From assembly GCA_965655095.1 (NCBI GenBank), contig OZ296651.1, positions 31,124,001-31,188,000 on the forward strand: DNA of 64,000 bases, read 5' to 3'. Of the stretch, positions 1 through 54,770 are shown one piece after another. The position numbers and the translations under genes are program-made. Every line of letters begins with the position of its first letter. Positions within the stretch are counted from its first letter, which is position 1. The notes under the pieces were generated by a model, which saw only the letters and a program-made list of their open reading frames with translations, was not told the DNA's origin and made no database searches. Source of the DNA: Haplodiscus bocki. Lineage: Eukaryota.

Positions 1-3000
1 CAGGAATAGGCGAACCGCGGTGCATCGAAAGGTCAATGATTAACTGCATTTTGAATGTTTTAGCTTGCGTTTGACAAGTTTCCTCTGTGACGGTCTTTAT
101 TTCAATGCGCTTGATTTTCTATTTTTTTTTGATTTTGCACCTCTACGTGATGTTCCGTTCTGAAAGAGGGTGTTCCGAGGCTCTTCCCAGGAATGGGTGA
201 ACCCCGGTGCCTCGAACAGTCAATGATTAGCTCCGTTCTGAGTCTTTGAGTTTGCCTTGGACTTTTTTTGTTTAAAACGGTCTTTGTTTGAATGAGCCTA
301 TTTTTCGAACCATTTGATCTTGGGAGCTTAGTGATGTTCCTTTTGGAAGAGGCCCCTCCAAATATTTGTTGATATTTTTTGTTTTTTTATTGTCACAAGT
401 TTTGTGTCTGACGGTCTTTGTTCCAAAGCTTGTTTTTCGACCCACTTGCTCTTGCTTGCGTACGTGATGTTTCGTTTAGAAAGGTTGTTCCGATGCTCCT
501 ACTGGTAATGGGTGAACCCTGGTGCATCGAGCAGTCAAATATTAGCTCCTTTCTGAATCTTTGAGTTTGCTGTGGACTTCTTTTATCTGTGACTGTCTTT
601 ATTTGATTGCGCTTGTTTTTCGATCCTTTTGATTTTCGGTGTCTACGTGATGTTCCGATCTGAAAGAGCCTGTTCCGAAGCTCCTCCCAGGAATGGGTGA
701 ACCCCGGTGCCCCGAACAGTCAATGATTAACTGCGTTCTGAATCTTGTAGCTTGCCTTTGACAAGTTTCGTCTGTGACGGTCTTTATTTGAATGCGCTTG
801 ATTTTCCATTCTTTTGATTTTACATGTCTACGTGATGTTCCGTTCTGAAAGAGGCTGTTCCGAGGCTCCTCCCAGGATTGGGTGAACCGCGGTGCATCGA
901 AAGGTCAATGATTAACTGCGTTCTGAATCTTTTAGCTTGCCTTTGACAAGTTCCGTCTGTGACGGTCTTTATTTGAATGCGCTTGATTTTCCATTCTTTT
1001 GATTTTTACATGTCTATGTGATGTTCCGTTCTGAAAGAGGCTGTTCCGAGGCTCCTCCCAGGATTGGGTGAACCCCGGTGCCTCGAACAGTCAATGATTA
1101 ACTGCGTTCTGAATCTTGTAGCTTGATTGCGGTGGTTACAGGGCTCCACGAGCAGTTGTGTAAGCCTGGCAACTGGATCAGTTGAAGATGACCTCCGCAG
1201 ATTCGTTTCTGTTGACACGTTCTGACTGTTTGACCGTCTTTATTTGAATGAGCTTTTGATTTATCAACCCTTCAAGTCTTCCTTGATTACGTGATGTTCC
1301 GTTTAGAAAGAGGTTTTTGCAGAGGCTCCTCCCGGTAATGTGTGAACCCTGGTGCATCGAGCAGTCATTGATTAACTGCGTTCTGAATCTTGTAACTTGC
1401 CTTTGACAAGTTTCGTCTGTGACGGTCTTTATTTGAATGCGCTTGATTTTCCATTCTTTTGATTTTGCATGTTTAGGTGATATTCCGTTCCGAAAGAGGT
1501 TGATCCGCAGCTCCTACCAGGAATGGGTTAACCCTGGTGGCTCGAGCAGTCAATGATTAGCTCCGTTCTGACTCTTTGAGTTCGCCTTGGACTTATTTCG
1601 TTTAAAACGGTCTTTATTTGAATGAGCCTATTTTTCGTCCCATTTGATCTTGCAGGCTTAGTGATGTTCCCTTTAGAAGAGGACCCTGAAAATGTTTGGT
1701 GGTAATTTTTGTTTTATTTAATGTCACAAGTTCTCTGTGTGACGGTCTTTGTTTGAAAGCTTGTTTTCCGACCCACTTGCTCTTGATTGCGTACGTGATG
1801 GTCCGTTTAGAAAGGTTGTTCCGATGCTCCTACCGGTAATGGGTGAACCCTGGTGGCTCGAGCAGTCAATGATTAGCTCCGTTCTGACTCTTTGAGTTCG
1901 CCTTGGACTTATTTCGTTTAAAACGGTCTTTATTTGAATGAGCCTATTTTTCGTCCCATTTGATCTTGCAGGCTTAGTGATGTTCCCTTTAGAAGAGGAC
2001 CCTGAAAATGTTTGGTGGTAATTTTTGTTTTATTTAATGTCACAAGTTCTGTGTGTGACGGTCTTTGTTTGAAAGCTTGTTTTCCGACCCACTTGCTCTT
2101 GATTGCGTACGTGATGGTCCGTTTAGAAAGGTTGTTCCGATGCTCCTACCGGTAATGGGTGAACCCTGATGCATCGAGCAGTCAATGATTAGCTCCGTTC
2201 TGAATCTTTGCGTTTGCCGTGGACTTATTTCGTCTGTGACGGTCTTGATTTGAATGCGCTTGTTTTTCCATTCTTTTGATTTTGCATGTTTACGTGATGT
2301 TCCGTTCCGGAAGAGGCTGATCCGCAGCTCCTACCAGGAATGGGTTAACCCTGGTGGCTCGAGCAGTCAATGATTAGCTCCGTTCTGACTCTTTGAGTTT
2401 GCCTTGGACTTTTTTCGTTTAAAACTGTCTTTATTTGAATGAGCCTATTTTTCGACCCATTTGATCTTGCCAGCTTAGTGATGTTCAATTTAGAAGGGGC
2501 GCCTCAAAATGTTTGGTGATAATTGTTGTTTTATTTAATGTCACAAGTTCTGTGTGTGACGGTCTTTGTTTGAAAGCTTGTTTTTCGACCCAATTGATCT
2601 TGATTGCGTGCGTGATGATCCGTTTAGAAAGGTTGTTCCGAGGCTCGTACCGGTAATGGGTGAAACCTGGTGCATCGAGCAGTCAACGATTAGCTCCGTT
2701 CTGAATCTTTGCGTTTGCCGTGGTTTTATTTCGTCTGTGACGGTCTTTATTAGAATGCGCTTGATTTTCCATTCTTTTGATTTTGCATGTCTACGTGATG
2801 TTCAGTTCTGAAAGAGGCTGTTCTGAGGTTCCTCCCAGGAATGGGTGAACCCCGGTGCCTGGAACAGTCAATGATTAACTGCTTTCTGAATCTTGTAGCT
2901 TGCCTTTGACAAGTTCCGTCTGTGACGGTCTTTATTTGAATGCGCTTGATTTTCCATTCTTTTGATTTTACATGTCTACGTGATGTTCCGTTCTGAAAGA

Positions 3001-4388
3001 GGCTGTTCCGAGGCTCCTCCCAGGAATGGGTGAACCCCGGTGCCTCGAACAGTCAATGATTAACTGCGTTCTGAATCTTGTAGTTTGATTGCGGTGGTTA
3101 CAGGGCTCCACGAGCAGTTGTGTAAGCCTGGCAACTGGATCAGTTGAAGATGACCTCCGCAGATTCGTTTCTGTTGACACGTTCTGACTGTTTGACCGTC
3201 TTTATTTGAATGAGCTTTTGATTTATCAACCCTTCAAGTCTTCCTTGATTACGTGATGTTCCGTTTAGAAAGAGGTTTTTGCAGAGGCTCCTCCCGGTAA
3301 TGTGTGAACCCTGGTGCATCGAGCAGTCATTGATTAACTGCGTTCTGAATCTTGTAACTTGCCTTTGACAAGTTTCGTCTGTGACGGTCTTTATTTGAAT
3401 GCGCTTGATTTTCCATTCCTTTGATTTTGCATGTTTACGTGATGTTCCGTTCCGGAAGAGGCTGATCCGCAGCTCCTCCCAGGAACAGGTGAACCGCGGT
3501 GCATCGAAAAGTCAATGATTAACTGCATTCTGAATGTTGTAGCTTGCCTTTGACAAGTTTCGTCTGTGACGGTCTTTATTTGAATGCGCTTGATTTTCTA
3601 TTTTTTTTTGATTTTGCACCTCTACGTCATGTTCCGTTCTGAACGAGGGTGTTCCGAGGCTCTTCTCAGGAATGTGTGAACTCCGGTGCCTCGAACAGTC
3701 AATGATTAGCTCCGTTCTGAGTCTGAGTTTGCCTTGGACTTTTTTCGTTTAAAACGGTCTTTATTTGAATGAGCCTTTTTTCGACCCTTTTGATTTTGCA
3801 TGTGTACTTGATGTTCCCTTTGGAAGGAGGCTGTTCTGAAGCTCCTCGCAGGAATGGGTTAACCCTGGTGGCTGGAGCAGTCAAGCATTAGTTCTGTTCT
3901 GAGTCTTTGAGTTTGCCTTGGACTTTTTTCGTTTAAAACGGTCTTTATTTGAATGAGCCTTTTTGTCGACCCATTTGATCTTGGGAGCTGAGTGATGTTC
4001 CTTTTGGAAGAGGACCTTCCAAATATTTGTTGATATTTGTTGTTTTATTTAATATCACAAGTTTTGTGGGTGACGGTCTTTGTTCCAAAGCTTGTTTTTC
4101 GACCCACTTGCTCTTGCTTGCGTACGTGATATTCCGTTTAGAAAGGTTGTTCCGTCGCTCCTACTGGTAATGGGTGAACCCTGGTGCATCGAGCAGTCAA
4201 CGATTAGCTCCGTTCTGAATCTTTGCGTTTGCCGTGGACTTATTTCCTCTGTGACAGTCTTTATTAGAATGCGCTTGATTTTCCATTCTTTTGATTTTGC
4301 ATGTCTACGTGATGTTCCGTTCTGAAAGAGGCTGTTCCGAGGCTCCTCCCAGGAATGGGTGAACCCCGGTGCCTGGAACAGTCAATGA

Positions 4389-7300
4389 TTAACTGCTTTC
4401 TGAATCTTGTAGCTTGCCTTTCACAATTTTCGTCTGTGACGGTCTTTATTTGAATGCGCTTGATTTTCCATTCTTTTGATTTTGCATGTTTACGTGATGT
4501 TCCGTTCCGGAAGAGGCTGATCGGCAGCTCCTCCCAGGAATAGGCGAACCGCGGTGCATCGAAAGGTCAATGATTAACTGCATTCTGAATGTTTTAGCTT
4601 GCGTTTGACAAGTTTCGTCTGTGACGGTCTTTATTTGAATGCGCTTGATTTTCTATTTTTTTTTGATTTTGCACCTCTACGTGATGTTCCGTTCTGAAAG
4701 AGGGTGTTCCGAGGCTCTTCCCAGGAATGGGTGAACCCCGGTGCCTCGAACAGTCAATGATTAGCTCCGTTCTGAGTCTTTGAGTTTGCCTTGGACTTTT
4801 TTCGTTTAAAACGGTCTTTGTTTGAATGAGCCTATTTTTCGAACCATTTGATCTTGGGAGCTTAGTGATGTTCCTTTTGGAAGAGGCCCCTCCAAATATT
4901 TGTTGATATTTGTTGTTTTATTTATTGTCACAAGTTTTGTGTCTGACGGTCTTTGTTCCAAAGCTTGTTTTTCGACCCACTTGCTCTTGCTTGCGTACGT
5001 GATATTTCGTTTAGAAAGGTTGTTCCGAGGCTCCTACTGGTAATGGGTGAACCCTGGTGCATCGAGCAGTCAAATATTAGCTCCTTTCTGAATCTTTGAG
5101 TTTGCTGTGGACTTCTTTTATCTGTGACTGTCTTTATTTGATTGAGCTTGTTTTTCGATCCTTTTGATTTTCGGTGTCTACGTGATGTTCCGATCTGAAA
5201 GAGGCTGTTCCGAAGCTCCTCCCAGGAATGGGTGAACCCCGGTGCCCCGAACAGTCAATGATTAACGGCGTTCTGAATCTTGTAGCTTGCCTTTGACAAG
5301 TTGCGTCTGTGACGGTCTTTATTTGAATGCGCTTGATTTTCCATTCTTTTGATTTTACATGTCTACGTGATGTTCCGTTCTGAAAGAGGCTGTTCCGAGG
5401 CTCCTCCCAGGAATGGGTGAACCCCGGTGCCTCGAACAGTCAATGAATAACTGCGTTCTGAATCTTGTAGCTTGATTGCGGTGGTTACAGGGCTCCACGA
5501 GCAGTTGTGTAAGCCTGGCAACTGGATCAGTTGAAGATGACCTCCGCAGATTCGTTTCTGTTGACACGTTCTGACTGTTTGACCGTCTTTATTTGAATGA
5601 GCTTTTGATTTATCAACCCTTCAAGTCTTCCTTGATTACGTGATGTTCCGTTTAGAAAGAGGTTTTTGCAGAGGCTCCTCCCGGTAATGTGTGAACCCTG
5701 GTGCATCGAGCAGTCATTGATTAACTGCGTTCTGAATCTTGTAACGTGCCTTTGACAAGTTTCGTCTGTGACGGTCTTTATTTGAATGCGCTTGATTTTC
5801 CATTCCTTTGATTTTGCATGTTTAGGTGATATTCCGTTCCGAAAGAGGTTGATCCGCAGCTCCTACCAGGAAGGGGTTAACCCTGTTGGCTCGAGCACTC
5901 AATGATTAGCTCCGTTCTGACTCTTTGAGTTCGCCTTGGACTTATTTCGTTTAAAACGGTCTTTATTTGAATGAGCCTATTTTTCGTCCCATTTGATCTT
6001 GCAGGCTTAGTGATGTTCCCTTTAGAAGAGGACCCTCAAAATGTTTGGTGGTAATTGTTGTTTTATTCAATGTCACAAGTTCTGTGTGTGACGGTCTTTG
6101 TTTGAAAGCTTGTTTTCCGACCCACTTGCTCTTGATTGCGTACGTGATGGTCCGTTTAGAAAGGTTTTTCCGAGGCTTCTACCGGTAACGGGTGAACCCT
6201 GATGCATCGAGCAGTCAACGATTAGCTCCGTTCTGAATCTTTGCGTTAGCCGTGGACTTATTTCGTCTGTGACGGTCTTTATTAGAATGCGCTTGATTTT
6301 CCATTCTTTTGATTTTGCATGTCTACGTGATGTTCCGTTCTGAAAGAGGCTGTTCCGAGGCTCCTCCCAGGAATGGGTGAACCCCGGTGCCTGGAACAGT
6401 CAATGATTAGCTCCGTTCTGAGTCTGAGTTTGCCTTGGACTTTTTTCGTTTAAAACGGTCTTTATTTGAATGAGCCTTTTTTTCGACCCTTTTCATTTTG
6501 CATGTGTACTTGATGTTCCCTTTGGAAGGAGGCTGTTCTGAAGCTCCTCGCAGGAATGGGTTAACCCTGGTGGCTGGAGAAGTCAAGGATTAGTTCTGTT
6601 CTGAGCCTTTGAGTTTGCCTTGGACTTTTTTCGTTTAAAACGGTCTTTATTTGAATGAGCCTTTTTGTCGACCCATTTGATCTTGGGAGCTTAGTGATGT
6701 TCCTTTTGGAAGAGGACCCTCCAAATATTTGTTGATATTTGTTGTTTTATTTAATGCCACAAGTTTTGTGGGTGACGGTCTTTGTTCCAAAGCTTGTTTT
6801 TCGACCCACTTGCTCTTGCTTGCGTACGTGATATTCCGTTTAGAAAGGTTGTTCCGTGGCTCCTACTGGTAATGGGTGAACCCTGGTGCATCGAGCAGTC
6901 AAATATTAGCTCCTTTCTGAATCTTTGAGTTTGCTGTGGACTTCTTTTATCTGTGACTGTCTTTATTTGATTGCGCTTGTTTTTCGATCCTTTTGATTTT
7001 GCATCTCTACGTGATGTTCCGTTCTGAAAGAGGCGCTTCCGAGGCTCCTCCCAGGAATGGATTAACCCTGGTGCATCGAGCAGTCAACGATTAACTGCTT
7101 TCTGAATCTTGTAGCTTGCCTTTCACAAGTTTCGTCTGTGACGGTCTTTATTTGAATGCGCTTGATTTTCCATTCTTTTGATTTTGCATGTTTACGTGAT
7201 GTTCCGTTCCGGAAGAGGCTGATCCGCAGCTCCTCCCAGGAATAGGCGAACCGCGGTGCATCGAAAGGTCAATGATTAACTGCATTCTGAATCTTGTAGC

Positions 7301-9795
7301 TTGCGTTTGACAAGTTTCGTCTGTGACGGTCTTTATTTGAATGCGCTTGATTTTCTATTTTTTTTTGATTTTGCACCTCTACGTGATGTTCCGTTCTGAA
7401 AGAGGGTGTTCCGAGGTTCTTCCCAGGAATGGGTGAACCCCGGTGCCTCGAACAGTCAATGATTAGCTCCGTTCTCAGTCTTTGAGTTTGCCTTGGACTT
7501 TTTTCGTTTAAAACGGTCTTTGTTTGAATGAGCCTATTTTTCGAACCATTTGATCTTGGGAGCTTAGTGATGTTCCTTTTGGAAGAGGCCCCTCCAAATA
7601 TTTGTTGATATTTGTTGTTTTATTTATTGTCACAAGTTTTGTGTCTGACGGTCTTTGTTCCAAAGCTTGTTTTTCGACCCACTTGCTCTTGCTTGCGTAC
7701 GTGATGTTTCGTTTAGAAAGGTTGTTCCGAGGCTCCTACTGGTAATGGGTGAACCCTGGTGCATCGAGCAGTCAAATATTAGCTCCTTTCTGAATCTTTG
7801 AGTTTGCTGTGGACTTCTTTTATCTGTGACTGTCTTTATTTGATTGAGCTTGTTTTTCGATCCTTTTGATTTTCGGTGTCTACGTGATGTTCCGATCTGA
7901 AAGAGGCTGTTCCGAAGCTCCTCCCAGGAATGGGTGAACCCCGGTGCCCCGAACAGTCAATGATTAACTGCGTTCTGAATCTTGTAGCTTGCCTTTGACA
8001 AGTTGCGTCTGTGACGGTCTTTATTTGAATGCGCTTGATTTTCCATTCTTTTGATTTTACATGTCTACGTGATGTTCCGTTCTGAAAGAGGCTGTTCCGA
8101 GGCTCCTCCCAGGAATGGGTGAACCCCGGTGCCTCGAACAGTCAATGAATAACTGCGTTCTGAATCTTGTAGCTTGATTGCGGTGGTTACAGGGCTCCAC
8201 GAGCAGTTGTGTAAGCCTGGCAACTGGATCAGTTGAAGATGACCTCCGCAGATTCGTTTCTGTTGACACGTTCTGACTGTTTGACCGTCTTTATTTGAAT
8301 GAGCTTTTGATTTATCAACCCTTCAAGTCTTCCTTGATTACGTGATGTTCCGTTTAGAAAGAGGTTTTTGCAGAGGCTCCTCCCGGTAATGTGTGAACCC
8401 TGGTGCATCGAGCAGTCATTGATTAACTGCGTTCTGAATCTTGTAACGTGCCTTTGACAAGTTTCGTCTGTGACGGTCTTTATTTGAATGCGCTTGATTT
8501 TCCATTCCTTTGATTTTGCATGTTTAGGTGATATTCCGTTCCGAAAGAGGTTGATCCGCAGCTCCTACCAGGAAGGTGTTAACCCTGTTGGCTCGAGCAC
8601 TCAATGATTAGCTCCGTTCTGACTCTTTGAGTTCGCCTTGGACTTATTTCGTTTAAAACGGTCTTTATTTGAATGAGCCTATTTTTCGTCCCATTTGATC
8701 TTGCAGGCTTAGTGATGTTCCCTTTAGAAGAGGACCCTCAAAATGTTTGGTGGTAATTGTTGTTTTATTCAATGTCACAAGTTCTGTGTGTGACGGTCTT
8801 TGTTTGAAAGCTTGTTTTCCGACCCACTTGCTCTTGATTGCGTACGTGATGGTCCGTTTAGAAAGGTTGTTCCGAGGCTTCTACCGGTAACGGGTGAACC
8901 CTGATGCATCGAGCAGTCAACGATTAGCTCCGTTCTGAATCTTTGCGTTAGCCGTGGACTTATTTCGTCTGTGACGGTCTTTATTAGAATGCGCTTGATT
9001 TTCCATTCTTTTGATTTTGCATGTCTACGTGATGTTCCGTTCTGAAAGAGGCTGTTCCGAGGCTCCTCCCAGGAATGGGTGAACCCCGGTGCCTGGAACA
9101 GTCAATGATTAGCTCCGTTCTGAGTCTGAGTTTGCCTTGGACTTTTTTCGTTTAAAACGGTCTTTATTTGAATGAGCCTTTTTTTCGACCCTTTTCATTT
9201 TGCATGTGTACTTGATGTTCCCTTTGGAAGGAGGCTGTTCTGAAGCTCCTCGCAGGAATGGGTTAACCCTGGTGGCTGGAGAAGTCAAGGATTAGTTCTG
9301 TTCTGAGCCTTTGAGTTTGCCTTGGACTTTTTTCGTTTAAAACGGTCTTTATTTGAATGAGCCTTTTTGTCGACCCATTTGATCTTGGGAGCTTAGTGAT
9401 GTTCCTTTTGGAAGAGGACCCTCCAAATATTTGTTGATATTTGTTGTTTTATTTAATGCCACAAGTTTTGTGGGTGACGGTCTTTGTTCCAAAGCTTGTT
9501 TTTCGACCCACTTGCTCTTGCTTGCGTACGTGATATTCCGTTTAGAAAGGTTGTTCCGTGGCTCCTACTGGTAATGGGTGAACCCTGGTGCATCGAGCAG
9601 TCAAATATTAGCTCCTTTCTGAATCTTTGAGTTTGCTGTGGACTTCTTTTATCTGTGACTGTCTTTATTTGATTGCGCTTGTTTTTCGATCCTTTTGATT
9701 TTGCATCTCTACGTGATGTTCCGTTCTGAAAGAGGCGCTTCCGAGGCTCCTCCCAGGAATGGATTAACCCTGGTGCATCGAGCAGTCAACGATTA
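4389..9795. repeat. Near-identical tandem duplication, period 2702 bp
   Basis: TTAACTGCTTTCTGAATC at 4389 and 7091; ORFs 5355 and 8057 are identical. Confidence 0.85.
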
Positions 9796-10116
9796 GCTCC
9801 GTTCTGAATCTTTGCGTTTGCCGTGGACTTATTTCGTCTGTGACAGTCTTTATAAGAATGCGCTTGATTTTCCATTCTTTTGATTTTGCATGTCTACGTG
9901 ATGTTCCGTTCTGAAAGAGGCTGTTCCGAGGCTCCTCCCAGGAATGGGTGAACCCCGGTGCCTGGAACAGTCAATGATTAACTGCTTTCTGAATCTTGTA
10001 GCTTGCCTTTCACAAGTTTCGTCTGTGACGGTCTTTATTTGAATGCGCTTGATTTTCCATTCTTTTGATTTTGCATGTTTACGTGATGTTCCGTTCCGGA
10101 AGAGGCTGATCCGCAG

Positions 10117-13100: not shown

Positions 13101-13427
13101 GTGGTAATTGTTGTTTTATTTAATGTCACAAGTTCTGTGTGTGACGGTCTTTGTTTGAAAGCTTGTTTTCCGACCCACTTGCTCTTGATTGCGTACGTGA
13201 TGGTCCGTTTAGAAAGGTTGTTCCGAGGCTCCTACCGGTAACGGGTGAACCCTGATGCATCGAGCAGTCAACGATTAGCTCCGTTCTGAATCTTTGCGTT
13301 TGCCGTGGACTTATTTCGTCTGTGACGGTCTTTATTAGAATGCGCTTGATTTTCCATTCTTTTGATTTTGCATGTCTACGTGATGTTCCGTTCTGAAAGA
13401 GGCTGTTCCGAGGCTCCTCCCAGGAAT
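10117..13427. repeat. Near-identical tandem duplication, period ~1648 bp
   Basis: ORFs 10724/12372; CTCCTCCCAGGAATAGGCG at 10117 and 11766. Confidence 0.8.
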
Positions 13428-31700: not shown

Positions 31701-31705
31701 GGTGC

Positions 31706-42500: not shown

Positions 42501-45500
42501 GCCCTTTTGTTCTTGCATGTATTCGTGATGTGCCGTTCAGGAAGAGGCTGTTCTGATGCTTTTCCCAGCAATGGGCAACCCTGGTGTTTTGGTCAGTCAA
42601 TATTTAACTCCGCATGGATCTTTTTTCCCGACAAGTTTTCTCTTTATGTGGCGGTCTTTGCTCTATTGAGCTTAGTTTTTCTTGAGCCATTTGATCTTCA
42701 TTGACTTTTGGATGTTCCGTTTAGGAAAAGGTTGTTTCGAGACTCCTGTTAGAAGTGCTTGAAGCCTGGTACCTGGATCAGTCAGTGAATAACTTTGCTG
42801 ATTCGTTTCTCTTGACAAGTTTTGTCTGTGTGACCGTCTTTATTCGATTTAACTTTTGATTTTTGCACTCATTTGGTCTTCCTTGCTTACGTGATGTTCC
42901 GTTTAGAAAGAAGATGTTTCCAGGTTCTTCCAAGCAAAGTGTGGACACTGTTGCTTCGAGTAGTCAATGGTTAACTACACTTTTTTCTTTTATTCTCACT
43001 TTGACCAGTTTTTGTGTGACGGTCTTCATTTGATTTGGTTTTTTTTCAGCCCATTCGATCTTGTTCGTTTACATGATTTTCCACTTAGAAAGAGGCTCTG
43101 CCGAGGCTCCTACTAGTGTTGGATTGTCTCTGGTGTTTTGATTCAATTTCACAAGTTTTCTGTGTGACGGCCTTTGTTTGGAAGAGCTTGGTTTTGGGCA
43201 GTTTTGATTTTGCATGTATTCGTGATGTTCCCTTCAGGGAGATGCTGTTTTGGGGCTCCTCCCAGCAGTGGGTGAACCCTGGTGCTTCGGCCAGTTAATG
43301 ACCGACTCCGTTCTGAATGTTTTGTTCAATAGTTTTTTTTTGTGTGGCGGTCTCTGCTCTGATGAGCTTTCTTTTTTCTCAATCCATTTGATGTTCCTTG
43401 ACTATTTGATGTTCCTTTTTAGGAAAAGTTGTTCTGAGACTACGGCCATTATTGCTTGCAGCCTTGTGACTCGATCAGTCGATGATTAATTCCGTTCCGA
43501 TTCTCTTGATTACTCAAGTTTTTTCTGTGTGACTCTTTGTTTGAATTATCTTTTGGTTTTTCCACTTATTTGATCTTGCTTGCTTACGTGATGTTCCGTT
43601 TAGAAAGAGGCTGTTTCCAGCTTCTTCCAAGCATTGGGTTAACCCTGGTACTTCGAGTAGTCAATGATTAACTCCGCTTTTTTGTTTTGACTCTGACCAG
43701 TTTTTTGTGTGACGGTCTTCATTTGAATTAGCTTTCTTCTGACCCATTCGATTTTGCTTGTTTATGTGATGCTCTGTTCAAAAAGAGGCTGTTCCTAGGC
43801 TCCTCCCAGTGATAGGTGAACCCCGGTGGCTCGAGCAGTCAATGAATAACGCCGTTCTTATTCTTTTGATATGTTTTGTCCTTGTCACCGTCATTATTTG
43901 AATGTGCTTTTGGTTTCTCCTCCCATTCGGCTTTGTCTGCTTACGTGAGGTGCCATTTGGAAAGAGTCTCTTCCGAGGCTCCTCCCAATAATGGGTAATC
44001 CCTGGTGCTTTGATTCGATTCCACATGTTTTGTCTGTGACGGTCTTTGATTGAAAGAGCTTGTTTTTGGGCCCTTTTGTTCTTGCATGTATTCGTGATGT
44101 GCCGTTCAGGAAGAGGCTGTTCTGATGCTTTTCCCAGCAATGGGCAACCCTGGTGTTTTGGTCAGTCAATATTTAACTCCGCATGGATCTTTTTTCCCGA
44201 CAAGTTTTCTCTTTATGTGGCGGTCTTTGCTCTATTGAGCTTAGTTTTTTCTTGAGCCATTTGATCTTCATTGACTTTTGGATGTTCCGTTTAGGAAAAG
44301 GTTGTTTCGAGACTCCTGTTAGAAGTGCTTGAAGCCTGGTACCTGGATCAGTCAGTGAATAACTTTGCTGATTCGTTTCTCTTGACAAGTTTTGTCTGTG
44401 TGACCGTCTTTATTCGATTTAACTTTTGATTTTTGCACTCATTTGGTCTTCCTTGCTTACGTGATGTTCCGTTTAGAAAGAAGATGTTTCCAGGTTCTTC
44501 CAAGCAAAGTGTGGACACTGTTGCTTCGAGTAGTCAATGGTTAACTACACTTTTTTCTTTTATTCTCACTTTGACCAGTTTTTGTGTGACGGTCTTCATT
44601 TGATTTGGTTTTTTTTTCAGCCCATTCGATCTTGTTCGTTTACGTGATTTTCCACTTAGAAAGAGGCTCTGCCGAGGCTCCTACTAGTGTTGGATTGTCT
44701 CTGGTGTTTTGATTCAATTTCACAAGTTTTCTGTGTGACGGCCTTTGTTTGGAAGAGCTTGGTTTTGGGCAGTTTTGATTTTGCATGTATTCGTGATGTT
44801 CCCTTCAGGGAGATGCTGTTTTGGGGCTCCTCCCAGCAGTGGGTGAACCCTGGTGCTTCGGCCAGTTAATGACCGACTCCGTTCTGAATGTTTTGTTCAA
44901 TAGTTTTTTTTTTGTGTGGCGGTCTCTGCTCTGATGAGCTTTCTTTTTTCTCAATCCATTTGATGTTCCTTGACTATTTGATGTTCCTTTTTAGGAAAAG
45001 TTGTTCTGAGACTACGGCCATTATTGCTTGCAGCCTTGTGACTCGATCAGTCGATGATTAATTCCGTTCCGATTCTCTTGATTACTCAAGTTTTTTCTGT
45101 GTGACTCTTTGTTTGAATTATCTTTTGGTTTTTCCACTTATTTGATCTTGCTTGCTTACGTGATGTTCCGTTTAGAAAGAGGCTGTTCCCAGCTTCTTCC
45201 AAGCATTGGGTGAACCCTGGTGCTTCGAGTAGTCAATGATCGTTTCCGTTCTGAATCTTATATTCGGCAAGTTTTTTTTTGTGTGTGGCGGTTTTTGCTC
45301 TGATGAGCTTTCTTTTTTCTCAATCCATTTGATGTTACTTGACTATTTGATGTTCCGTTTTGGAAAAAGTTGTTCGCAGACTCCTGCCATTATTGCTTGA
45401 AGCCTTGTGACTCGATCAGTCGATGATTAATTCCCTTCCGGTTCTTTTAATTACTCAAGTTTTTTCTGTGTGACTGTCTTTGTTTGATTTATCTTATGGT

Positions 45501-48500
45501 TTTTCCACTCATTTGATCTTGCTTGCTTATGTGATGTTCCGCTTAGAAAGAGGCTGTTCTCAGCTTCTTCCAAGCATTGGGTGAACACTGGTACTTCGAA
45601 TAGTCAATAATTAACTCCGCTTTTTTTGTTTTGACTCTGACCAGTTTTTTGTGTGTCGGTCTTCATTTGAATTAGCTTTTTTCCGACCCATTCGATCTTG
45701 CTTGTTTATCTGATGCTCCGTTCAAAAAGAGGCTGTTCCTAGGCTCCTCCCACTAATGGGTGAACCCCGGTGGCTCGAGCAGTCAATGATTAACGCCGTT
45801 CTGATTCTTTTGAATTGTTTTGTCTGTGTCACTGTCATTATTTGAATGTGCTTTTGGTTTCTCCTCCCATTCGGCTTGGTCTGCTTACGTGAGGTGCCAT
45901 TTGGAAAGAGGCTCTTCCGAGGCTCCTCCCAATAATGGGTAATCCCTGGTGCTTTGATTCGATTTCACATGTTTTGTCTGTTTCGGTCTTTGTTTGAAAG
46001 AGCTTGTTTTTGGGCCCTTTTGTTTTGCATCCATTCGTGATGTTCCCTTCAGGAAGATGCTGTTTTGGGGTTCCTTCCAGTAGTGGGTGAACCCTGGCGC
46101 TTCGACCAGTTAATGATCGACTCCGTTCTGAATCTTTTATTCGGCAAGTTTTTATTTTGTGTGGCGGTCTTTGCTCTGATGAGCTTTCTTTTTTCTCAAT
46201 CCATTTGATGTTCCTTGACTATTTGATGTTCCTTTTTGGAAAAAGTTGTTCTGAGACTACTGCCATTGTTGCTTGCAGCCTTGTGACTCGATCAGTCGAT
46301 GATTAATTCCGTTCCGATTCTCTTGATTACTCAAGTTTTTTCTGTGTGACTCTTTGTTTGAATTATCTTTTGGTTTTTCCTGTCATTTGATCTTGCTTGC
46401 TTACGTGATGTTCCGTTCAGAAAGAGGCTGTTTCCAGCTTCTTCCAAGCATTGGGTTAACCCTGGTACTTCGAGTAGTCAATGATTAACTCCGCTTTTTT
46501 GTTTTGACTCTGACCAGTTTTTTGTGTGACGGTCTTCATTTGAATTAGCTTTCTTCTGACCCATTCGATCTTGCTTGTTTATGTGATGCTCTGTTCAAAT
46601 AGAGGCTGTTCCTAGGCTCCTCCTAGTGATAGGTGAACCCCGGTGGCTCGAGCAGTCAATGAATAACGCCGTTCTTATTCTTTTGATATGTTTTGTCCTT
46701 GTCACCGTCATTATTTGAATGTGCTTTTGGTTTCTCCTCCCATTCGGCTTTGTCTGCTTACGTGAGGTGCTATTTGGAAAGAGGCTCTTCCGAGGCTCCT
46801 CCCATTAATGGGTAATCCCTGGTGCTTTGATTCGATTTCACATGTTTTGTCTGTGACGGTCTTTGTTTGAAAGAGCTTGTTTTTGGGCCCTTTTGTTTTG
46901 CATCCATTCGTGATGTTCCCTTCAGGAAGATGCTGCTTTGGGGCTCCTTCCAGTAGTGGGTGAACCCTGGCGCTTCGACCAGTTAATGATCGACTCCGTT
47001 CTGAATCTTTTATTCGGCAAGTTTTTATTTTGTGTGGCGGTCTTTGCTCTGATGAGCTTTCTTTTTTCTCAATCCATTTGATGTTCCTTGACTATTTGAT
47101 GTTCCTTTTTAGAAAAAGTTGTTCTGAGACTACTGCCATTGTTGCTTGCAGCCTTGTGACTCGATCAGTCGATGATTAATTCCGTTCCGATTCTCTTAAT
47201 TACTCAAGTTTTTTCTGTGTGACTGTCTTTTTTTGAATTATCTTTTGGTTTTTCCTGTCATTTGATCTTGCTTGCTTACGTGATGTTCCGCTTAGAAAGA
47301 GGCTGTTCCCAGCTTCTTCCAAGCATTGGGTGAACCCTGGTGCTTCGAGTAGTCAATGATCGTTTCCGTTCTGAATCTTATATTCGGCAAGTTTTTATTT
47401 TGTGTGGCGGTCTTTGCTCTGATGAGCTTTCTTTTTTCTCAATCCATTTGATGTTCCTTGACTATTTGATGTTCCTTTTTAGAAAAAGTTGTTCTGAGAC
47501 TACTGCCATTGTTGCTTGCAGCCTTGTGACTCGATCAGTCGATGATTAATTCCGTTCCGATTCTCTTAATTACTCAAGTTTTTTCTGTGTGACTGTCTTT
47601 GTTTGAATTATCTTTTGGTTTTTCCACTCATTTGATCTTGCTTGCTTATGTGATGTTCCGCTTCGAAAGAGGCTGTTCTCAGCTTCTTCCAAGCATTGGG
47701 TGAACCCTGGTACTTCGAGTAGTCAATAATTAACTCCGCTTTTTTTGTTTTGACTCTTACCAGTTTTTTGTGTGTCGGTCTTCATTTGAATTAGCTTTTT
47801 TCCGACCCATTCGATCTTGCTTGTTTATCTGATGCTCCGTTCAAAAAGAGGCTGTTCCTAGGCTCCTCCCACTAATGGGTGAACCCCGGTGGCTCGAGCA
47901 GTCAATGATTAACGCCGTTCTGATTCTTTTGAATTGTTTTGTCTGTGTCACTCTCATTATTTGAATGTGCTTTTTGTTTCTCCTCCCATTCGGCTTTGTC
48001 TGCTTACGTGAGGTGCCATTTGGAAAGAGGCTCTTCCGAGCCTCCTCCCAATAATGGGTAATCCCTGGTGCTTTGATTCGATTTCACATGTTTTGTCTGT
48101 GACGGTCTTTGTTTGAAAGAGCTTGTTTTTGGGCCCTTTTGTTTTGCATCCATTCGTGATGTTCCCTTCAGGAAGATGCTGCTTTGGGGCTCCTTCCAGT
48201 AGTGGGTGAACCCTGGCGCTTCGACCAGTTAATGATCGACTGCGTTCTGAATCTTTTATTCGGCAAGTTTTTATTTTGTGTGGCGGTCTTTGCTCTGATG
48301 AGCTTTCTTTTTTCTCAATCCATTTGATGTTCCTTGACTATTTGATGTTCCTTTTTAGAAAAAGTTGTTCTGAGACTACTGCCATTGTTGCTTGCAGCCT
48401 TGTGACTCGATCAGTCGATGATTAATTCCGTTCCGATTCTCTTGATTACTCAAGTTTTTTCTGTGTGACTCTTTGTTTGAATTATCTTTTGGTTTTTCCT

Positions 48501-50094
48501 GTCATTTGATCTTGCTTGCTTACGTGATGTTCCGTTCAGAAAGAGGCTGTTTCCAGCTTCTTCCAAGCATTGGGTTAACCCTGGTACTTCGAGTAGTCAA
48601 TGATTAACTCCGCTTTTTTGTTTTGACTCTGACAAGTTTTTTGTGTGACGGTCTTCATTTGAATTAGCTTTCTTCTGACCCATTCGATCTTGCTTGTTTA
48701 TATGATGCTCTGTTCAAAAAGAGGCTGTTCCTAGGCTCCTCCCAGTGATGGGTGAACCCCGGTGGCTCGAGCAGTCAATGAATAACGCCGTTCTTTTTCT
48801 TTTGATATGTTTTGTCCTTGTCACCGTCATTATTTGAATGTGCTTTTGGTTTCTCCTCCCATTCGGCTTTGTCTGCTTACGTGAGGTGCCATTTGGAAAG
48901 AGTCTCTTCCGAGGCTCCTCCCAATAATGGGTAATCCCTGGTGCTTTGATTCGATTCCACATGTTTTGTCTGTGACGGTCTTTGATTGAAAGAGCTTGTT
49001 TTTGGGCCCTTTTGTTCTTGCATGTATTCGTGATGTGCCGTTCAGGAAGAGGCTGTTCTGATGCTTTTCCCAGCAATGGGCAACCCTGGTGTTTTGGTCA
49101 GTCAATATTTAACTCCGCATGGATCTTTTTTCCCGACAAGTTTTCTCTTTATGTGGCGGTCTTTGCTCTATTGAGCTTAGTTTTTTCTTGAGCCATTTGA
49201 TCTTCATTGACTTTTGGATGTTCCGTTTAGGAAAAGGTTGTTTCGAGACTCCTGTTAGAAGTGCTTGAAGCCTGGTACCTGGATCAGTCAGTGAATAACT
49301 TTGCTGATTCGTTTCTCTTGACAAGTTTTGTCTGTGTGACCGTCTTTATTCGATTTAACTTTTGATTTTTGCACTCATTTGGTCTTCCTTGCTTACGTGA
49401 TGTTCCGTTTAGAAAGAAGATGTTTCCAGGTTCTTCCAAGCAAAGTGTGGACACTGTTGCTTCGAGTAGTCAATGGTTAACTACACTTTTTTCTTTTATT
49501 CTCACTTTGACCAGTTTTTGTGTGACGGTCTTCATTTGATTTGGTTTTTTTTTCAGCCCATTCGATCTTGTTCGTTTACGTGATTTTCCACTTAGAAAGA
49601 GGCTCTGCCGAGGCTCCTACTAGTGTTGGATTGTCTCTGGTGTTTTGATTCAATTTCACAAGTTTTCTGTGTGACGGCCTTTGTTTGGAAGAGCTTGGTT
49701 TTGGGCAGTTTTGATTTTGCATGTATTCGTGATGTTCCCTTCAGGGAGATGCTGTTTTGGGGCTCCTCCCAGCAGTGGGTGAACCCTGGTGCTTCGGCCA
49801 GTTAATGACCGACTCCGTTCTGAATGTTTTGTTCAATAGTTTTTTTTTTGTGTGGCGGTCTCTGCTCTGATGAGCTTTCTTTTTTCTCAATCCATTTGAT
49901 GTTCCTTGACTATTTGATGTTCCTTTTTAGGAAAAGTTGTTCTGAGACTACGGCCATTATTGCTTGCAGCCTTGTGACTCGATCAGTCGATGATTAATTC
50001 CGTTCCGATTCTCTTGATTACTCAAGTTTTTTCTGTGTGACTCTTTGTTTGAATTATCTTTTGGTTTTTCCACTTATTTGATCTTGCTTGCTTA

Positions 50095-51700
50095 CGTGAT
50101 GTTCCGTTTAGAAAGAGGCTGTTCCCAGCTTCTTCCAAGCATTGGGTGAACCCTGGTGCTTCGAGTAGTCAATGATTAACTCCACTTTTCTTTTAGTCTC
50201 ACTTTGACCAATTACACAACTTTTTGTGTGACGGTCTTCATTTGAATTAGCTTTTTTTGGACCCATTCGATCTTGCTTGTTTACGTGATATTTCACTTAG
50301 AAAGAAGTTCTTCCGAGGCGCCTACTAGTTTTGGAAAATCCTTGGTGTTTTGATTCAATTTCACAAGTTCTCTGTGTGACGGCCTTTGTTTGAAAGAGCT
50401 TGTTTTCATGCCCTTTTGATTTTGCATGCATTCGTGGTGTTCCGTTCAGAAAGAGGCTGTTCTGAGGCTCCTCCTAGCAGTGGGTGAACCCTGGTGCTTC
50501 GACCAGTCAGTGATCGACTCCGTTCTAAATCTTTTATTGGGCAACTTTATGTGGCGGTCTCTGCTCTGATGAGTTTTATTTTTTCTTGATCCATTTGATG
50601 TTCTTTGACTATTTGATGTTCCGTTTTGGAAAAAGTTGTTGGCAGACTCCTGCCATTATTGCTTGAAGCCTTGTGACTCGATCAGTCGATGATTAATTCC
50701 GTCCCGATTCTTTAAATTATCGCAAGTTTTTTCTGTGTGACTGTCTTTTTTTGAATTATCTTTTGGTTTTTCCACTCATTTGCTCTTGCTCGCATACGTG
50801 ATGTTCCGTTTAGAAAGAGGCTGTTCCCAGCTTCTTCCAAGCATTGGGTGAACCCTGGTGCTTCGAGTAGTCAATGATTAACTCCACTTTTCTTTTAGTC
50901 CCACTTTGACCAATTACACAACTTTTTGTGTGACGGTCTTCATTTGAATTAGCTTTTTTTGGACCCATTCGATCTTGCTTGTTTACGTGATATTTCACTT
51001 AGAAAGAAGTTCTTCCGAGGCGCCTACTAGTTTTGGAAAATCCTTGGTGTTTTGATTCAATTTCACAAGTTCTCTGTGTGACGGCCTTTGTTTGAAAGAG
51101 CTTGTTTTCATGCCCTTTTGATTTTGCATGCATTCGTGGTGTTCCGTTCAGAAAGAGGCTGTTCTGAGGCTCCTCCTAGCAGTGGGTGAACCCTGGTGCT
51201 TCGACCAGTCAGTGATCGACTCCGTTCTAAATCTTTTATTGGGCAACTTTATGTGGCGGTCTCTGCTCTGATGAGTTTTATTTTTTCTTGATCCATTTGA
51301 TGTTCTTTGACTATTTGATGTTCCGTTTTGGAAAAAGTTGTTGGCAGACTCCTGCCATTATTGCTTGAAGCCTTGTGACTCGATCAGTCGATGATTAATT
51401 CCGTCCCGATTCTTTAAATTATCGCAAGTTTTTTCTGTGTGACTGTCTTTTTTTGAATTATCTTTTGGTTTTTCCACTCATTTGCTCTTGCTCGCATACG
51501 TGATGTTCCGTTTAGAAAGAGGCTGTTCCCAGCTTCTTCCAAGCATTGGGTGAACCCTGGTGCTTCGAGTAGTCAATGATTAACTCCACTTTTCTTTTAG
51601 TCCCACTTTGACCAATTACACAACTTTTTGTGTGACGGTCTTCATTTGAATTAGCTTTTTTTGGACCCATTCGATCTTGCTTGTTTACGTGATATTTAAC
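50095..51700. repeat. 702-bp tetramer higher-order repeat (~2.3 copies, with a further related copy near 53.0-53.7 kb)
   Basis: CGCATACGTGATG with the anchor at 50798 and 51500; the private insertion CCAATTACACAAC occurs three times. Confidence 0.82.
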
Positions 51701-54124
51701 TTAGAAAGAAGTTCTTCCGAGGCTCCTAGTAGTTTTGGAAAATCCTTGGTGTTTTCATTCAATTTCACAAGTTTTCTGTGTGACGGCCTTTGTTTGGAAG
51801 AGCTTGTTTTTTGGGCCCTTTTGATTTTGCATGCATTCGTGATGTTCCGTTCAGGAAGAGGCTGTTATGAGGCCCTTCCCAGCAGCGGGTGAACCCTGGT
51901 GCTTCGACCAGTCAATGGTCGACTCCGTTCTGAATCTTTTATTGGGCAACTTTTTTCTTTATGTGGCGGTCTTTGCTCTATTGAGCTTAGTTTTTTCTTG
52001 AGCCATTTGATCTTCATTGACTTTTGGATGTTCCGTTTAGGAAAAGGTTGTTTCGAGACTCCTGTTAGAAGTGCTTGAAGCCTGGTACCTGGATCAGTCA
52101 GTGAATAACTTTGCTGATTCGTTTCTCTTGACAAGTTTTGTCTGTGTGACCGTCTCTATTCGATTTAACTTTTGATTTTTGCACTCATTTGGTCTTCCTT
52201 GCTTACGTGATGTTCCGTTTAGAAAGAAGATGTTTCCAGGTTCTTCCAAGCAAAGTGTGGACACTGTTGCTTCGAGTAGTCAATGGTTAACTACACTTTT
52301 TTCTTTTATTCTCACTTTGACCAGTTTTTGTGTGACGGTCTTCATTTGATTTGGTTTTTTTTTCAGCCCATTCGATCTTGTTCGTTTACGTGATTTTCCA
52401 CTTAGAAAGAGGCTCTGCCGAGGCTCCTACTAGTGTTGGATTGTCTCTGGTGTTTTGATTCAATTTCACAAGTTTTCTGTGTGACGGCCTTTGTTTGGAA
52501 GAGCTTGGTTTTGGGCAGTTTTGATTTTGCATGTATTCGTGATGTTCCCTTCAGGGAGATGCTGTTTTGGGGCTCCTCCCAGCAGTGGGTGAACCCTGGT
52601 GCTTCGGCCAGTTAATGACCGACTCCGTTCTGAATGTTTTGTTCAATAGTTTTTTTTTGTGTGGCGGTCTCTGCTCTGATGAGCTTTCTTTTTTCTCAAT
52701 CCATTTGATGTTCTTTGACTATTTGATGTTCCGTTTTGGAAAAAATTGTTCGCAGACTCCTGCCATTATTGCTTGAAGCCTTGTGACTCGATCAGTTGAT
52801 GATTAATTCCGTCCCGATTCTTTTAGTTTCTCAAGTGTTTCTGTGTGACTGTCTTTGTTTGAATTATCTTTTGGTTTTTCCACTTATTTGATCTTGCTTG
52901 CTTACGTGATGTTCCGTTTAGAAAGAGGCTGTTCCCAGCTTCTTCCACGCATTGGGTGAACCCTGGTACTTCGAGTAGTCAATGATTAACTCTGCTTTTT
53001 TTGTTTTGACTCTGACCAATTTTTTGTGTGACGGTCTTCATTTCAATTAGCTTTTTTGGACCCATTCGATCTTGCTTGTTTACGTGATATTTCACTTAGA
53101 AAGAAGTTCTTCCGAGGCGCCTACTAGTTTTGGAAAATCCTTGGTGTTTTGATTCAATTTCACAAGTTCTCTGTGTGACGGCCTTTGTTTGAAAGAGCTT
53201 GTTTTCATGCCCTTTTGATTTTGCATGCATTCGTGGTGTTCCGTTCAGAAAGAGGCTGTTCTGAGGCTCCTCCTAGCAGTGGGTGAACCCTGGTGCTTCG
53301 ACCAGTCAGTGATCGACTCCGTTCTAAATCTTTTATTGGGCAACTTTATGTGGCGGTCTCTGCTCTGATGAGTTTTATTTTTTCTTGATCCATTTGATGT
53401 TCTTTGACTATTTGATGTTCCGTTTTGGAAAAAGTTGTTGGCAGACTCCTGCCATTATTGCTTGAAGCCTTGTGACTCGATCAGTCGATGATTAATTCCG
53501 TCCCGATTCTTTAAATTATCGCAAGTTTTTTCTGTGTGACTGTCTTTGTTTGAATTTTCTTTTGGTTTTTCCACTCATTTGCTCTTGCTCGCATACGTGA
53601 TGTTCCGTTTAGAAAGAGGCTGTTCCCAGCTTCTTCCAAGCATTGGGTGAACCCTGGTGCTTCGAGTAGTCAATGATCGACTCCGTTCTGAATCTTTTAT
53701 CCGGCACGTTTTTTCTTTATAGGGCGGTCTTTGCTCTAATGAGCTTTCTTTTTTCTCAAGCCATTTGATGTTCCTTGACTTTTGGACGTTGCGTTTAGGA
53801 AAAGAATATTTCGAGACTCCTCTCAGCAGTGCTCGAAGCCTGGTATCGGATCAGTCAACGATTAGCTCCGTTTTGCTTTTTCATTTTTTTATTACCTTTT
53901 CGTTCGGGTGCAGGGTCTTTTTCAAACGGATCACGGGTTCATTTGAGGTTCTCCCTTCTTCTGACTTATCTGTTTTTGTTTTCGTGCTCTTTGGGCTGGT
54001 GCTGGATTGATTCCTGCTTCTGAACTGACTGTGGATCACATAAACCTGTTTTTAAAACTTGATTCTTCATTTACGTTCACCCTTCTGACATGCACATTAT
54101 GGTGCAATTGAATTGATGTTTCAG

Positions 54125-54355
54125 ACTCTGCTCAACAACGAGAGTGTTCAGTTCAAGCAAGTGGAACAGCCGTGTCCGCCGTGTAGAACGCAAGTGGAGA
54201 TATCCTGTTTCGGGCAACACGAGACCATTAGCATCCAGTGTGCCAAAGGCAAAACGTATTCTTGTGGAGTACCCTGCGGTAGACAGCTTTCCTGTGGCAA
54301 TCACACTTGCGAACGCATTTGCCATGTTGTACATACTGCTCCTGACGAATCTACG
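54125..54355 (+). CDS. NFXL1: Internal coding exon (77 codons, phase 0/0) of an NF-X1-type zinc finger protein, NFXL1-like
   Basis: Acceptor GATGTTTCAG before 54125 and donor ACG|GTGAGC at 54356; 231 nt with no stop. The translation QFKQVEQPCPPCRTQVEISCFGQHE...CAKGKTYSCGVPCGRQLSCGNHTCERICH contains the NF-X1 repeat CGxHxCxxxCH and the CPPC..C.G.HE..C...YSC...CGR.L.C pattern I recall from NFXL1 proteins. Orthology versus NFX1 is from memory, not a search. Confidence 0.85.
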
Positions 54356-54758
54356 GTGAGCTACTCAATTCAAAAACTTCCCCGATTTTTTATAAGTGCA
54401 TATTTTATTGACTTCATCCATTATGGAAATTTTATTTTTTCACAAAAATGTTGGTCGTCAAAGCTTACAATGTATCACTTCACTTCTTGGTTTTCATGTA
54501 ATGACTGCTGTATTGATGATAGCAACTTTATGGACATCAAGTGAGAATAATCTCAAGTCAAAATTTTCCTGCTTTGATGGAACCAAAGCCTTTTCATGTT
54601 TGTCGTCTATGTCTTGGTGATTTGAAATCAACAGGCGTCCACTTTGTCTCCTCGGACGAAGGTGCTTTGATTCGCCGTGATAGCAGTGTATTTTTATAGA
54701 CTATATTTGAAGTTTTAACTTCTTGTAATCATTATTGATTCTCTTGTTGCTATTTCAG

Positions 54759-54770
54759 AATTTACCCACA
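54759..54770 (+). CDS. Candidate 12-nt microexon (Asn-Leu-Pro-Thr), in frame with the NFXL1-like exon
   Basis: TTCTCTTGTTGCTATTTCAG|AATTTACCCACA|GTAAGT: consensus acceptor and perfect donor, length divisible by 3, no stop in phase 0, 44-nt AG-free zone upstream and a branch-like TTTAAC at 54714-54719. Confidence 0.5.

What the first reader, a model, noticed from the sequence alone, without database searches (positions are those of the whole stretch)
1..54355. A >53-kb satellite array ends ~250 bp upstream of an intact internal NFXL1-like exon: candidate satellite-filled giant intron
Seen: the array runs from the window start to ~53,875, the acceptor is at 54,124, and the exon has both splice sites, no stop and intact Cys/His ligands. 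Known: this peptide lies in the middle of the NF-X1 repeat region, so earlier exons must exist. None can fit in 1-53.9 kb. Inference: if the gene is functional, Pol II transcribes through at least 54 kb of centromere-like satellite, as in the satellite-filled introns of Drosophila Y fertility genes, but here in a conserved gene. The alternative is an orphaned duplicate exon at a heterochromatin border. I also did not recognise the next zinc-finger exon in the following 9.6 kb.
Basis: partly seen in the sequence, partly recalled or inferred. Interest (0 to 1): 0.8.

Follow-up and report, generated by a model that had tools for sequence, protein, structure and literature searches.

The report
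Conserved NFXL1 exon abutting giant satellite
A well-preserved internal exon of the conserved zinc-finger gene NFXL1, in what is clearly an acoel worm genome, sits 235 bases after at least 54 kb of tandem satellite DNA, so the gene most likely has a giant satellite-filled intron, a known oddity of fly Y-chromosome genes, though no RNA or flanking-exon data could be obtained to prove it.

Summary
Window 1-53,890 is one uninterrupted, single-orientation array of ~185-bp monomers with no unique island. A 231-nt exon with AG/GT borders lies at 54,125-54,355. No other NFXL1 exon is in the window.

The exon is 83% identical in protein to NFXL1-like genes of two acoel worms, Symsagittifera roscoffensis and Convolutriloba macropyga. 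Length, phase and boundaries are identical in all three. It encodes finger 8 of 10 (residues 726-802 of 1082). dN/dS is about 0.07. It keeps every conserved column that the two acoels keep, so it has been under selection for most of its history.

The intron before it is 2.1 kb and 2.7 kb in the relatives, and at least 54 kb here. The C. macropyga gene already spans 144 kb. The array's sense strand has no AATAAA, ATTAAA or GTRAGT; the antisense strand has 204, 21 and 1.

The intron reading is the best explanation (about 0.6) but is unproven. An orphan duplicate exon or a misjoin inside the array remain possible.

The scan has noted satellite-filled introns on other DNA of this genome (TTLL5, MSL3; unchecked here). 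New member of a known kind.

The parts
1..53890 (+). Satellite array, all monomers in one orientation. It runs off the window start, so it is at least 53.9 kb long. T-rich on the + strand (T 39.6%, A 18%).
1..26700 (+). Array domain A. ~185-bp monomers about 80-85% alike, stacked in higher-order blocks of 2,702, 4,351, 2,057 and 1,426 bp whose copies are 97-99.9% identical. GC about 0.44.
28300..53890 (+). Array domain B. 368-370-bp dimers of two diverged monomer types, in higher-order blocks of 4,101 and 3,049 bp with kb-scale copies up to 100% identical. A 99% copy reaches 53,684. GC about 0.41. The stretch at about 26.7-28.3 kb is a more diverged transition.
53891..54124 (+). Unique 3' end of the presumed intron. 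Candidate branch site CTGAC at 54,085-54,089 (A at 54,088, 36 nt before the AG), then a short pyrimidine run and AG at 54,123-54,124.
   Evidence: read; uniqueness
54125..54355 (+). NFXL1 exon. 231 nt, phase 0/0, 77 aa, encoding NF-X1-type finger 8 of 10. Equivalent to S. roscoffensis residues 726-802 and C. macropyga residues 758-834.
54356..64000 (+). Donor GTGAGC, then at least 9.6 kb with no further NFXL1 exon (presumed next intron). It contains dispersed repeats and a decayed hAT element.
59397..61116 (+). Decayed hAT-type transposase gene, split over several ORFs and frames: a BED-like start, then DUF659 (5.7e-9), then the hAT dimerisation domain (8.7e-5).

Best explanation
The exon is coding exon 7 of this acoel worm's working NFXL1 gene. 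The satellite array lies inside the intron that precedes it. That intron is about 2-3 kb in two related acoels and has been inflated here to at least 54 kb by recent amplification of a ~185-bp satellite. Inferred mechanism: RNA polymerase II reads through the array in the orientation in which the repeat offers no canonical poly(A) signal and no consensus 5' splice site. The whole array is then removed as ordinary intron, using the branch site and AG at 54,088/54,124. The next intron is also enlarged (over 9.6 kb, with a dead hAT element). Shown: the array, the exon, its orthology, its conservation, the signal-free sense strand, and the 144-kb gene in a relative. Inferred: the position of the upstream exons, transcription through the array, and splicing.
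For: (1) Orthology. The exon is 83% identical in protein and 74-76% in DNA to NFXL1-like genes of S. roscoffensis and C. macropyga; the next-best animals are at about 50%. (2) Exon length (231 nt), phase and AG/GT borders are identical in the three species. (3) Selection. dN is 0.11-0.13 with synonymous sites saturated, giving dN/dS of about 0.07. Changes specific to the window fall 4/7/19 on codon positions 1/2/3. All Cys/His ligands are kept. Of 28 columns conserved in 116 non-acoel NFXL1 proteins, the exon keeps 22, the same 22 as both acoels, and none of its 9 private replacements hits one (chance about 0.04). (4) There are no stops or frameshifts. (5) Giant introns occur in this very gene: the annotated range is 16.4 kb in S. 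roscoffensis but 144 kb in C. macropyga, and in locus L002 the exon after the orthologous one is absent from the next 17 kb. (6) The sense strand of the 53.9-kb array has 0 AATAAA, 0 ATTAAA and 0 GTRAGT, against 204, 21 and 1 on the other strand. (7) The exon is not enclosed by terminal inverted repeats of a transposon. (8) The window has no N, so the array-to-unique junction lies inside one assembled contig.
Against: No upstream or downstream NFXL1 exon is in the window, so 'intron' rests on inference. There are no RNA or read data. No protein from this genome's NFXL1 was found in any database, so a complete copy elsewhere cannot be excluded. C. macropyga has two near-identical NFXL1-like loci, one of which ends just after this exon, so partial duplication of this gene does occur in acoels. 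The window lineage has about twice as many private amino-acid changes (9) as either relative (4 and 4); this could be tree shape or some relaxation. The strand asymmetry of signals is a property of one monomer, so it amounts to a single 50:50 observation. kb-scale copies that are 100% identical make assembly errors inside the array plausible.
Confidence: 0.6

Rival explanations
1. Orphan or partially duplicated exon. A small piece of the NFXL1 gene, this exon plus a few hundred bases, was copied or stranded at the edge of a satellite block fairly recently. It is not part of any mRNA, and the working gene is elsewhere.
For: Only one of about 10 coding exons is present in 64 kb. In relatives the neighbouring exons lie only 2-2.7 kb upstream and 0.7 kb downstream. 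C. macropyga carries a second NFXL1-like locus whose model stops just after this exon. The exon has more private amino-acid changes (9) than either relative (4). The array shows very recent rearrangement up to about 200 bp from its edge.
Against: The exon shows the signature of long purifying selection and no defect. At neutral rates a 231-nt frame, its splice sites and 12 ligands would survive only for a few per cent of divergence, so the orphaning would have to be very recent. There are no transposon ends around the exon. No second copy was seen, although this could not be properly searched.
Confidence: 0.25
2. Assembly artefact. The contig joins the true NFXL1 intron to an unrelated array of the same satellite family, or mis-sizes the array. 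The 54 kb, and whatever lies beyond it, would then not reflect the real chromosome.
For: The array holds kb-scale copies that are 97-100% identical. These are longer than many reads' unique anchors and are a classic source of collapse or false joins.
Against: There is no gap (N) in the window. The junction at 53,890 is a unique sequence, so reads anchored in the unique part must extend into satellite. Even under a misjoin deeper in the array, the exon still abuts satellite DNA. The array changes gradually in type (domain A to domain B) rather than abruptly.
Confidence: 0.1
3. Short downstream transcript. The array is intergenic, and the AG at 54,124 receives the worm's spliced leader by trans-splicing, starting a truncated message from this exon onwards.
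For: Other agents of this scan report a spliced leader in this genome (notes s1-359309 and s1-354058, not tested here). A trans-splice acceptor looks like an ordinary 3' splice site.
Against: The exon has no methionine and its boundary is the conserved cis-splice boundary of an internal exon. A product beginning here would lack the RING/PHD part and seven fingers.
Confidence: 0.05

Closest known systems
Satellite-containing gigantic introns of Drosophila Y-linked fertility genes (kl-2, kl-3, kl-5, ORY). Source: PMC6508621 (title and abstract seen), with related PMC11207136 and PMC12965833.
   Same: Tandem satellite DNA lies, or here probably lies, inside an intron of a conserved protein-coding gene, and must be transcribed and spliced out. 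The intron is tens of times longer than in relatives.
   Different: The fly introns reach megabases and are made of simple 5-7-bp repeats. They sit on a Y chromosome, in testis-specific genes served by a dedicated expression programme. Here the repeat is a complex ~185-bp monomer with higher-order structure. The gene is NFXL1, not known as germline-specific, and the host is an acoel. Transcription is unproven.
NFXL1 / NF-X1-type zinc finger proteins (Pfam PF01422). Acoel orthologues XP_063722934 (S. roscoffensis) and XP_075243129 (C. macropyga).
   Same: The exon encodes one NF-X1 finger. It has identical exon borders and 83% protein identity to the acoel orthologues.
   Different: Only one exon is visible here. 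The preceding intron is 2.1 kb and 2.7 kb in those species, against at least 54 kb here.
Centromeric or pericentromeric satellites with higher-order repeats (alpha-satellite type). This comparison rests on general knowledge.
   Same: The monomer is about nucleosome length, orientation is uniform, higher-order blocks are nested, amplification is recent, and the monomer core has dyad symmetry.
   Different: There is no evidence of centromere function or of a unique chromosomal position. The array ends 235 bp from a conserved exon.
Other satellite-filled introns noted by this scan in the same genome (TTLL5, s1-364292; MSL3-like, s1-354066).
   Same: Same genome, and the same layout of a long tandem array inside or next to a conserved gene.
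   Different: Those are other agents' notes on other DNA and were not checked here. In the TTLL5 case exons were reportedly seen on both sides of the array, which is not so here.

Membership tests
NFXL1 orthologue (NF-X1-type zinc finger protein) | NF-X1-type finger motif C-x(1-8)-H-x-C-x(2-4)-C-[HC] with intact ligands | tested here: met
   One motif at 54,275-54,325. Pfam PF01422 E=5e-4 at 20.5 bits, just under the 22.7-bit cut-off because only one partial repeat is scored. All Cys/His columns conserved in 116 NFXL1 proteins are kept.
NFXL1 orthologue (NF-X1-type zinc finger protein) | Closest relatives are NFXL1 rather than NFX1 or other paralogues | tested here: met
   The best hit from a library of 1.84 billion representative proteins is S. 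roscoffensis NFXL1-like at E=1.4e-36. The names come from NCBI. Identity to two acoel NFXL1-like proteins is 83%.
NFXL1 orthologue (NF-X1-type zinc finger protein) | Conserved exon-intron structure at this position | tested here: met
   231 nt, phase 0/0 and AG...GT in the window, L001:22131-22361 and L002:64942-65172.
NFXL1 orthologue (NF-X1-type zinc finger protein) | Full architecture in this genome: N-terminal RING/PHD-type finger, about 10 NF-X1 fingers, C-terminal membrane anchor | not testable with these tools
   The relatives have 10 fingers and a hydrophobic C-terminus. In this genome only exon 7 is within reach.
Satellite-filled giant intron (Drosophila Y fertility-gene type) | Tandem array lies between two exons of one gene on the same strand | not testable with these tools
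   The downstream side is met: the exon lies 235 bp after the array. The upstream exons are outside the window, and the rest of the chromosome cannot be searched.
Satellite-filled giant intron (Drosophila Y fertility-gene type) | The gene is functional (under purifying selection, no defects) | tested here: met
   At exon level only: dN/dS about 0.07, third-position bias, conserved columns kept, no stop.
Satellite-filled giant intron (Drosophila Y fertility-gene type) | Array is transcribed in the sense direction and spliced out | not testable with these tools
Indirect only: the sense strand lacks AATAAA, ATTAAA and GTRAGT.
Centromeric satellite | Nucleosome-length monomer in higher-order repeats | tested here: met
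Centromeric satellite | Centromere-protein binding, or one array per chromosome at the primary constriction | not testable with these tools
   No chromatin data or whole-genome data available.
Pseudogene or orphan exon | Disabling changes (stop, frameshift, lost splice site or ligand) | tested here: not met
   None found.
Pseudogene or orphan exon | A complete parent gene elsewhere in the same genome | not testable with these tools
   No protein of this genome's NFXL1 was found in the databases. The assembly itself is not searchable.

The most novel reading that the evidence does not exclude
Intron gigantism by satellite invasion is a genome-wide habit of this acoel lineage. It would affect broadly used, conserved genes (NFXL1 here; TTLL5 and MSL3 by other notes) rather than a few testis-specific Y genes. 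Arrays would be tolerated only in the orientation whose sense strand is free of poly(A) signals and 5' splice sites. That would give an independent, non-Drosophila system for asking how polymerase and spliceosome cope with tens to hundreds of kb of satellite.
Probability: 0.3. Interest if true: 0.7.

Novelty: new member of a known kind. Interest (0 to 1): 0.45.

Why it matters
If the exon is spliced into NFXL1 mRNA, a conserved, apparently ordinary gene of an early-branching bilaterian is transcribed through at least 54 kb of recently amplified, centromere-like satellite. So far that situation has been studied almost only in Drosophila Y-linked fertility genes. Together with the 144-kb orthologue in Convolutriloba and the other cases noted in this genome, it would make acoels a second system for studying intron gigantism. 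It would also give a simple testable rule: the array orientation that avoids poly(A) and donor signals. If the exon is instead orphaned, this is only a routine gene fragment at a heterochromatin border.

Tried and rejected
- **Word-index protein search with the 77-aa exon:** no candidate. The length filter makes this blank uninformative.
- **Search for mRNA-derived fragments of this species' NFXL1 that would join exon 7 to its neighbours** (query P0269:640-900): it returned only distant proteins, plus one exon-5 ORF from an unidentified acoel in an ENA metagenome scaffold (L003). L003 lacks exon 7 and shares no DNA with the window, so it gives no help.
- **Exact look-ups of P0001 and P0151:** not on record. 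The longest isoforms worked, but the 144-kb C. macropyga locus was too long for its DNA to be returned.
There is therefore no RNA junction evidence and no long-read evidence.
- **Rfam (gathering threshold) and tRNA scans of the whole window:** nothing. The monomer is not a known RNA gene, ribozyme or tRNA derivative.
- **Synteny:** tblastx of 53.9-64 kb against L001 and L002 finds only the exon. The dynein heavy-chain gene that overlaps the C. macropyga locus on the other strand is not seen here.
- **Transposon capture of the exon:** no inverted or direct repeats enclose it.
- **The scan's own notes:** searches by sequence and for NFXL1/NFX1 words were blank.
- **Coral origin,** suggested in some earlier notes, is rejected for this locus: the acoel proteins are at 83% identity against about 50% for everything else.
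Full report
**The array**

Tandem Repeats Finder reports 183-187-bp and 368-370-bp periods from the window start to about 48.8 kb. A BLAST of one monomer gives 281 hits, all on the + strand, the last ending at 53,875 and none after it. Aligning the edge region against the rest of the array shows that homology stops at 53,890.

A self-comparison of the whole window finds that every base of 1-53,890 is repeated (median 269 copies). There is no unique island of 60 bp or more, whereas 53,891-64,000 is essentially single-copy. There is no N in the window.

The array has two domains:
- **About 1-26.7 kb:** ~185-bp monomers 80-85% alike. They are arranged in higher-order blocks of 2,702, 4,351, 2,057 and 1,426 bp whose copies are 97-99.9% identical.
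- **About 28.3-53.9 kb:** 368-370-bp dimers in 4,101-bp and 3,049-bp blocks, with kb-scale copies up to 100% identical. A 99% copy reaches 53,684.

So the array was amplified recently, right up to its edge. It runs off the window start, so 53.9 kb is a minimum. Rfam and tRNA scans find nothing.

**The exon**

Window 54,125-54,355 is open in frame 1 (77 aa). It is preceded by ...tttcag and followed by gtgagc. A CTGAC branch-site candidate lies 36 nt before the AG.

It carries the only NF-X1-type motif in any of the six frames of the window. It gives a sub-threshold Pfam zf-NF-X1 hit, because only one partial repeat is scored, and a weak match to yeast FAP1 among solved structures.

tblastn with nine NFXL1-type proteins, and separately with the C-terminal parts of the two acoel orthologues at E up to 50, finds no other exon anywhere in the window.
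- the gap between array and acceptor is about 235 bp;
- the exon is finger 8 of 10, residues 726-802 of 1082 in the S. roscoffensis protein.

**Whose gene it is**

A full HMMER pass over 1.84 billion representative proteins gives one outstanding hit (E=1.4e-36). NCBI names it NFXL1-like of the acoel Symsagittifera roscoffensis. The second close relative is NFXL1-like of the acoel Convolutriloba macropyga.

The exon is 83% identical in protein to both and 74-76% identical in DNA. All other animals are near 50%. At this locus the genome therefore behaves as a third convolutid-type acoel, or carries an equally old paralogue. This agrees with several other notes of this scan and disagrees with those that guessed a coral.

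**Is the exon alive?**

In S. roscoffensis (L001:22131-22361) and C. macropyga (L002:64942-65172) the orthologous exon has the same length (231 nt), the same phase 0/0 and the same AG/GT borders.
- Synonymous sites are saturated, while dN is 0.11-0.13, giving dN/dS of about 0.07.
- Nucleotide changes private to the window fall 4, 7 and 19 on codon positions 1, 2 and 3.
- In an alignment with 116 non-acoel NFXL1 proteins, 28 columns are at least 80% conserved. The window keeps 22 of them, exactly the same 22 as both acoels.
- None of its nine private replacements touches one of those columns (chance about 0.04 by my own hypergeometric estimate).

The exon has thus been under purifying selection for nearly all of its separate history. 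If it is orphaned, that happened very recently.

**Intron sizes in relatives**

The intron before this exon is 2,059 bp in S. roscoffensis and 2,746 bp in C. macropyga locus L002. The intron after it is 0.7 kb in S. roscoffensis. Here the two introns are at least 54 kb and at least 9.6 kb.

The annotated gene spans 16.4 kb in S. roscoffensis but 144 kb in C. macropyga. In L002 the next exon is not found in the 17 kb that follow the orthologous exon. So intron gigantism in this particular gene already exists in an annotated relative.

C. macropyga also has a second, nearly identical NFXL1-like locus. Its model ends just after this exon and contains a tandemly duplicated exon. This shows that partial duplication of this gene happens in acoels and keeps the orphan-exon rival alive.

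**A feature bearing on mechanism**

On the + strand, which is the sense strand of the exon, the 53.9-kb array has no AATAAA, no ATTAAA and no GTRAGT. The expectations from base composition are 4 AATAAA and 9 ATTAAA. The opposite strand has 204, 21 and 1.

In this orientation a polymerase coming from upstream exons would meet no canonical cleavage signal and no strong decoy donor. In the other orientation it would meet an AATAAA in most monomers. Because this is a property of one monomer, it counts as a single 50:50 observation. It is compatible with the intron reading and suggests a rule that can be tested on other arrays, but it proves nothing.

**What could not be done**

- No protein of this genome's NFXL1 is in the protein collections.
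- The only extra acoel fragment found (L003) comes from another, more distant worm and lacks exon 7.
- The scan's notes hold nothing on NFXL1 elsewhere in the genome.
- Consequently the position of exons 1-6, the copy number of exon 7 and its use in mRNA remain open.

**Verdict**

| Reading | Probability |
|---|---|
| Working exon 7 of this acoel's NFXL1, with the satellite inside the preceding intron | 0.6 |
| Recently orphaned or duplicated exon at a satellite border | 0.25 |
| Misjoin or mis-sizing inside the array (the exon would still abut satellite) | 0.1 |
| Leader-trans-spliced short transcript | 0.05 |

The closest known system is the satellite-containing gigantic introns of the Drosophila Y fertility genes (PMC6508621; related PMC11207136). 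Searches of the held papers for acoel plus satellite DNA, and for NFXL1 plus intron, returned nothing whose title or abstract describes such introns in acoels or in NFXL1.

Other agents of this scan have already reported satellite-filled introns on other DNA of the same genome: TTLL5 (s1-364292) and an MSL3-like gene (s1-354066). I did not check those. They make this one more probable member of a recurring pattern rather than a first sighting.

Noticed in passing
window 59397-61116 (+): Decayed hAT-type transposase split over at least four ORFs and frames: a BED-like N-terminus, then DUF659, then the hAT dimerisation domain. It lies in the presumed downstream intron.
   Followed up: partly
window 5350-5470 and equivalent positions in domain-A monomers: The monomer core has dyad symmetry. 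As RNA the minus strand folds well below shuffled controls (z = -3.7), while the plus strand does not (z = -1.2). Domain-B monomers show no such fold. This relates to another first-reader note (s1-356386). No Rfam family matches.
   Followed up: partly
window 55199-55257 and 58362-58714: Imperfect inverted arms about 3.1-3.4 kb apart (pairs I1 and I5). They could be the ends of a non-autonomous DNA transposon in the downstream intron.
   Followed up: no
L002 (C. macropyga OZ077302.1) 42218-75359: Short clusters of an unrelated ~170-bp tandem repeat sit in at least seven places in the introns of the NFXL1-like gene. All are in the sense orientation and T-rich on the sense strand.
   Followed up: partly
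L002 41345-45651: One coding exon of the C. macropyga NFXL1-like gene is tandemly duplicated (3.87-kb spacing), and both copies are used in model XP_075243686. That model ends just after the exon orthologous to ours. A 3,749-aa dynein heavy-chain gene is annotated on the opposite strand across the whole locus.
   Followed up: no
L003 (ENA metagenome scaffold CHAS20-1_SAMN14350115): A 3.3-kb scaffold in an environmental metagenome carries NFXL1 exons of a further, unidentified acoel-like animal. Identity to S. roscoffensis is 62-82%, and the equivalents of exons 3 and 4 are fused.
   Followed up: partly
window 26700-28300: This is a transition zone between the two array domains. Here the best internal matches drop to 76-85%, and both GC content and AT skew shift.
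   Followed up: no
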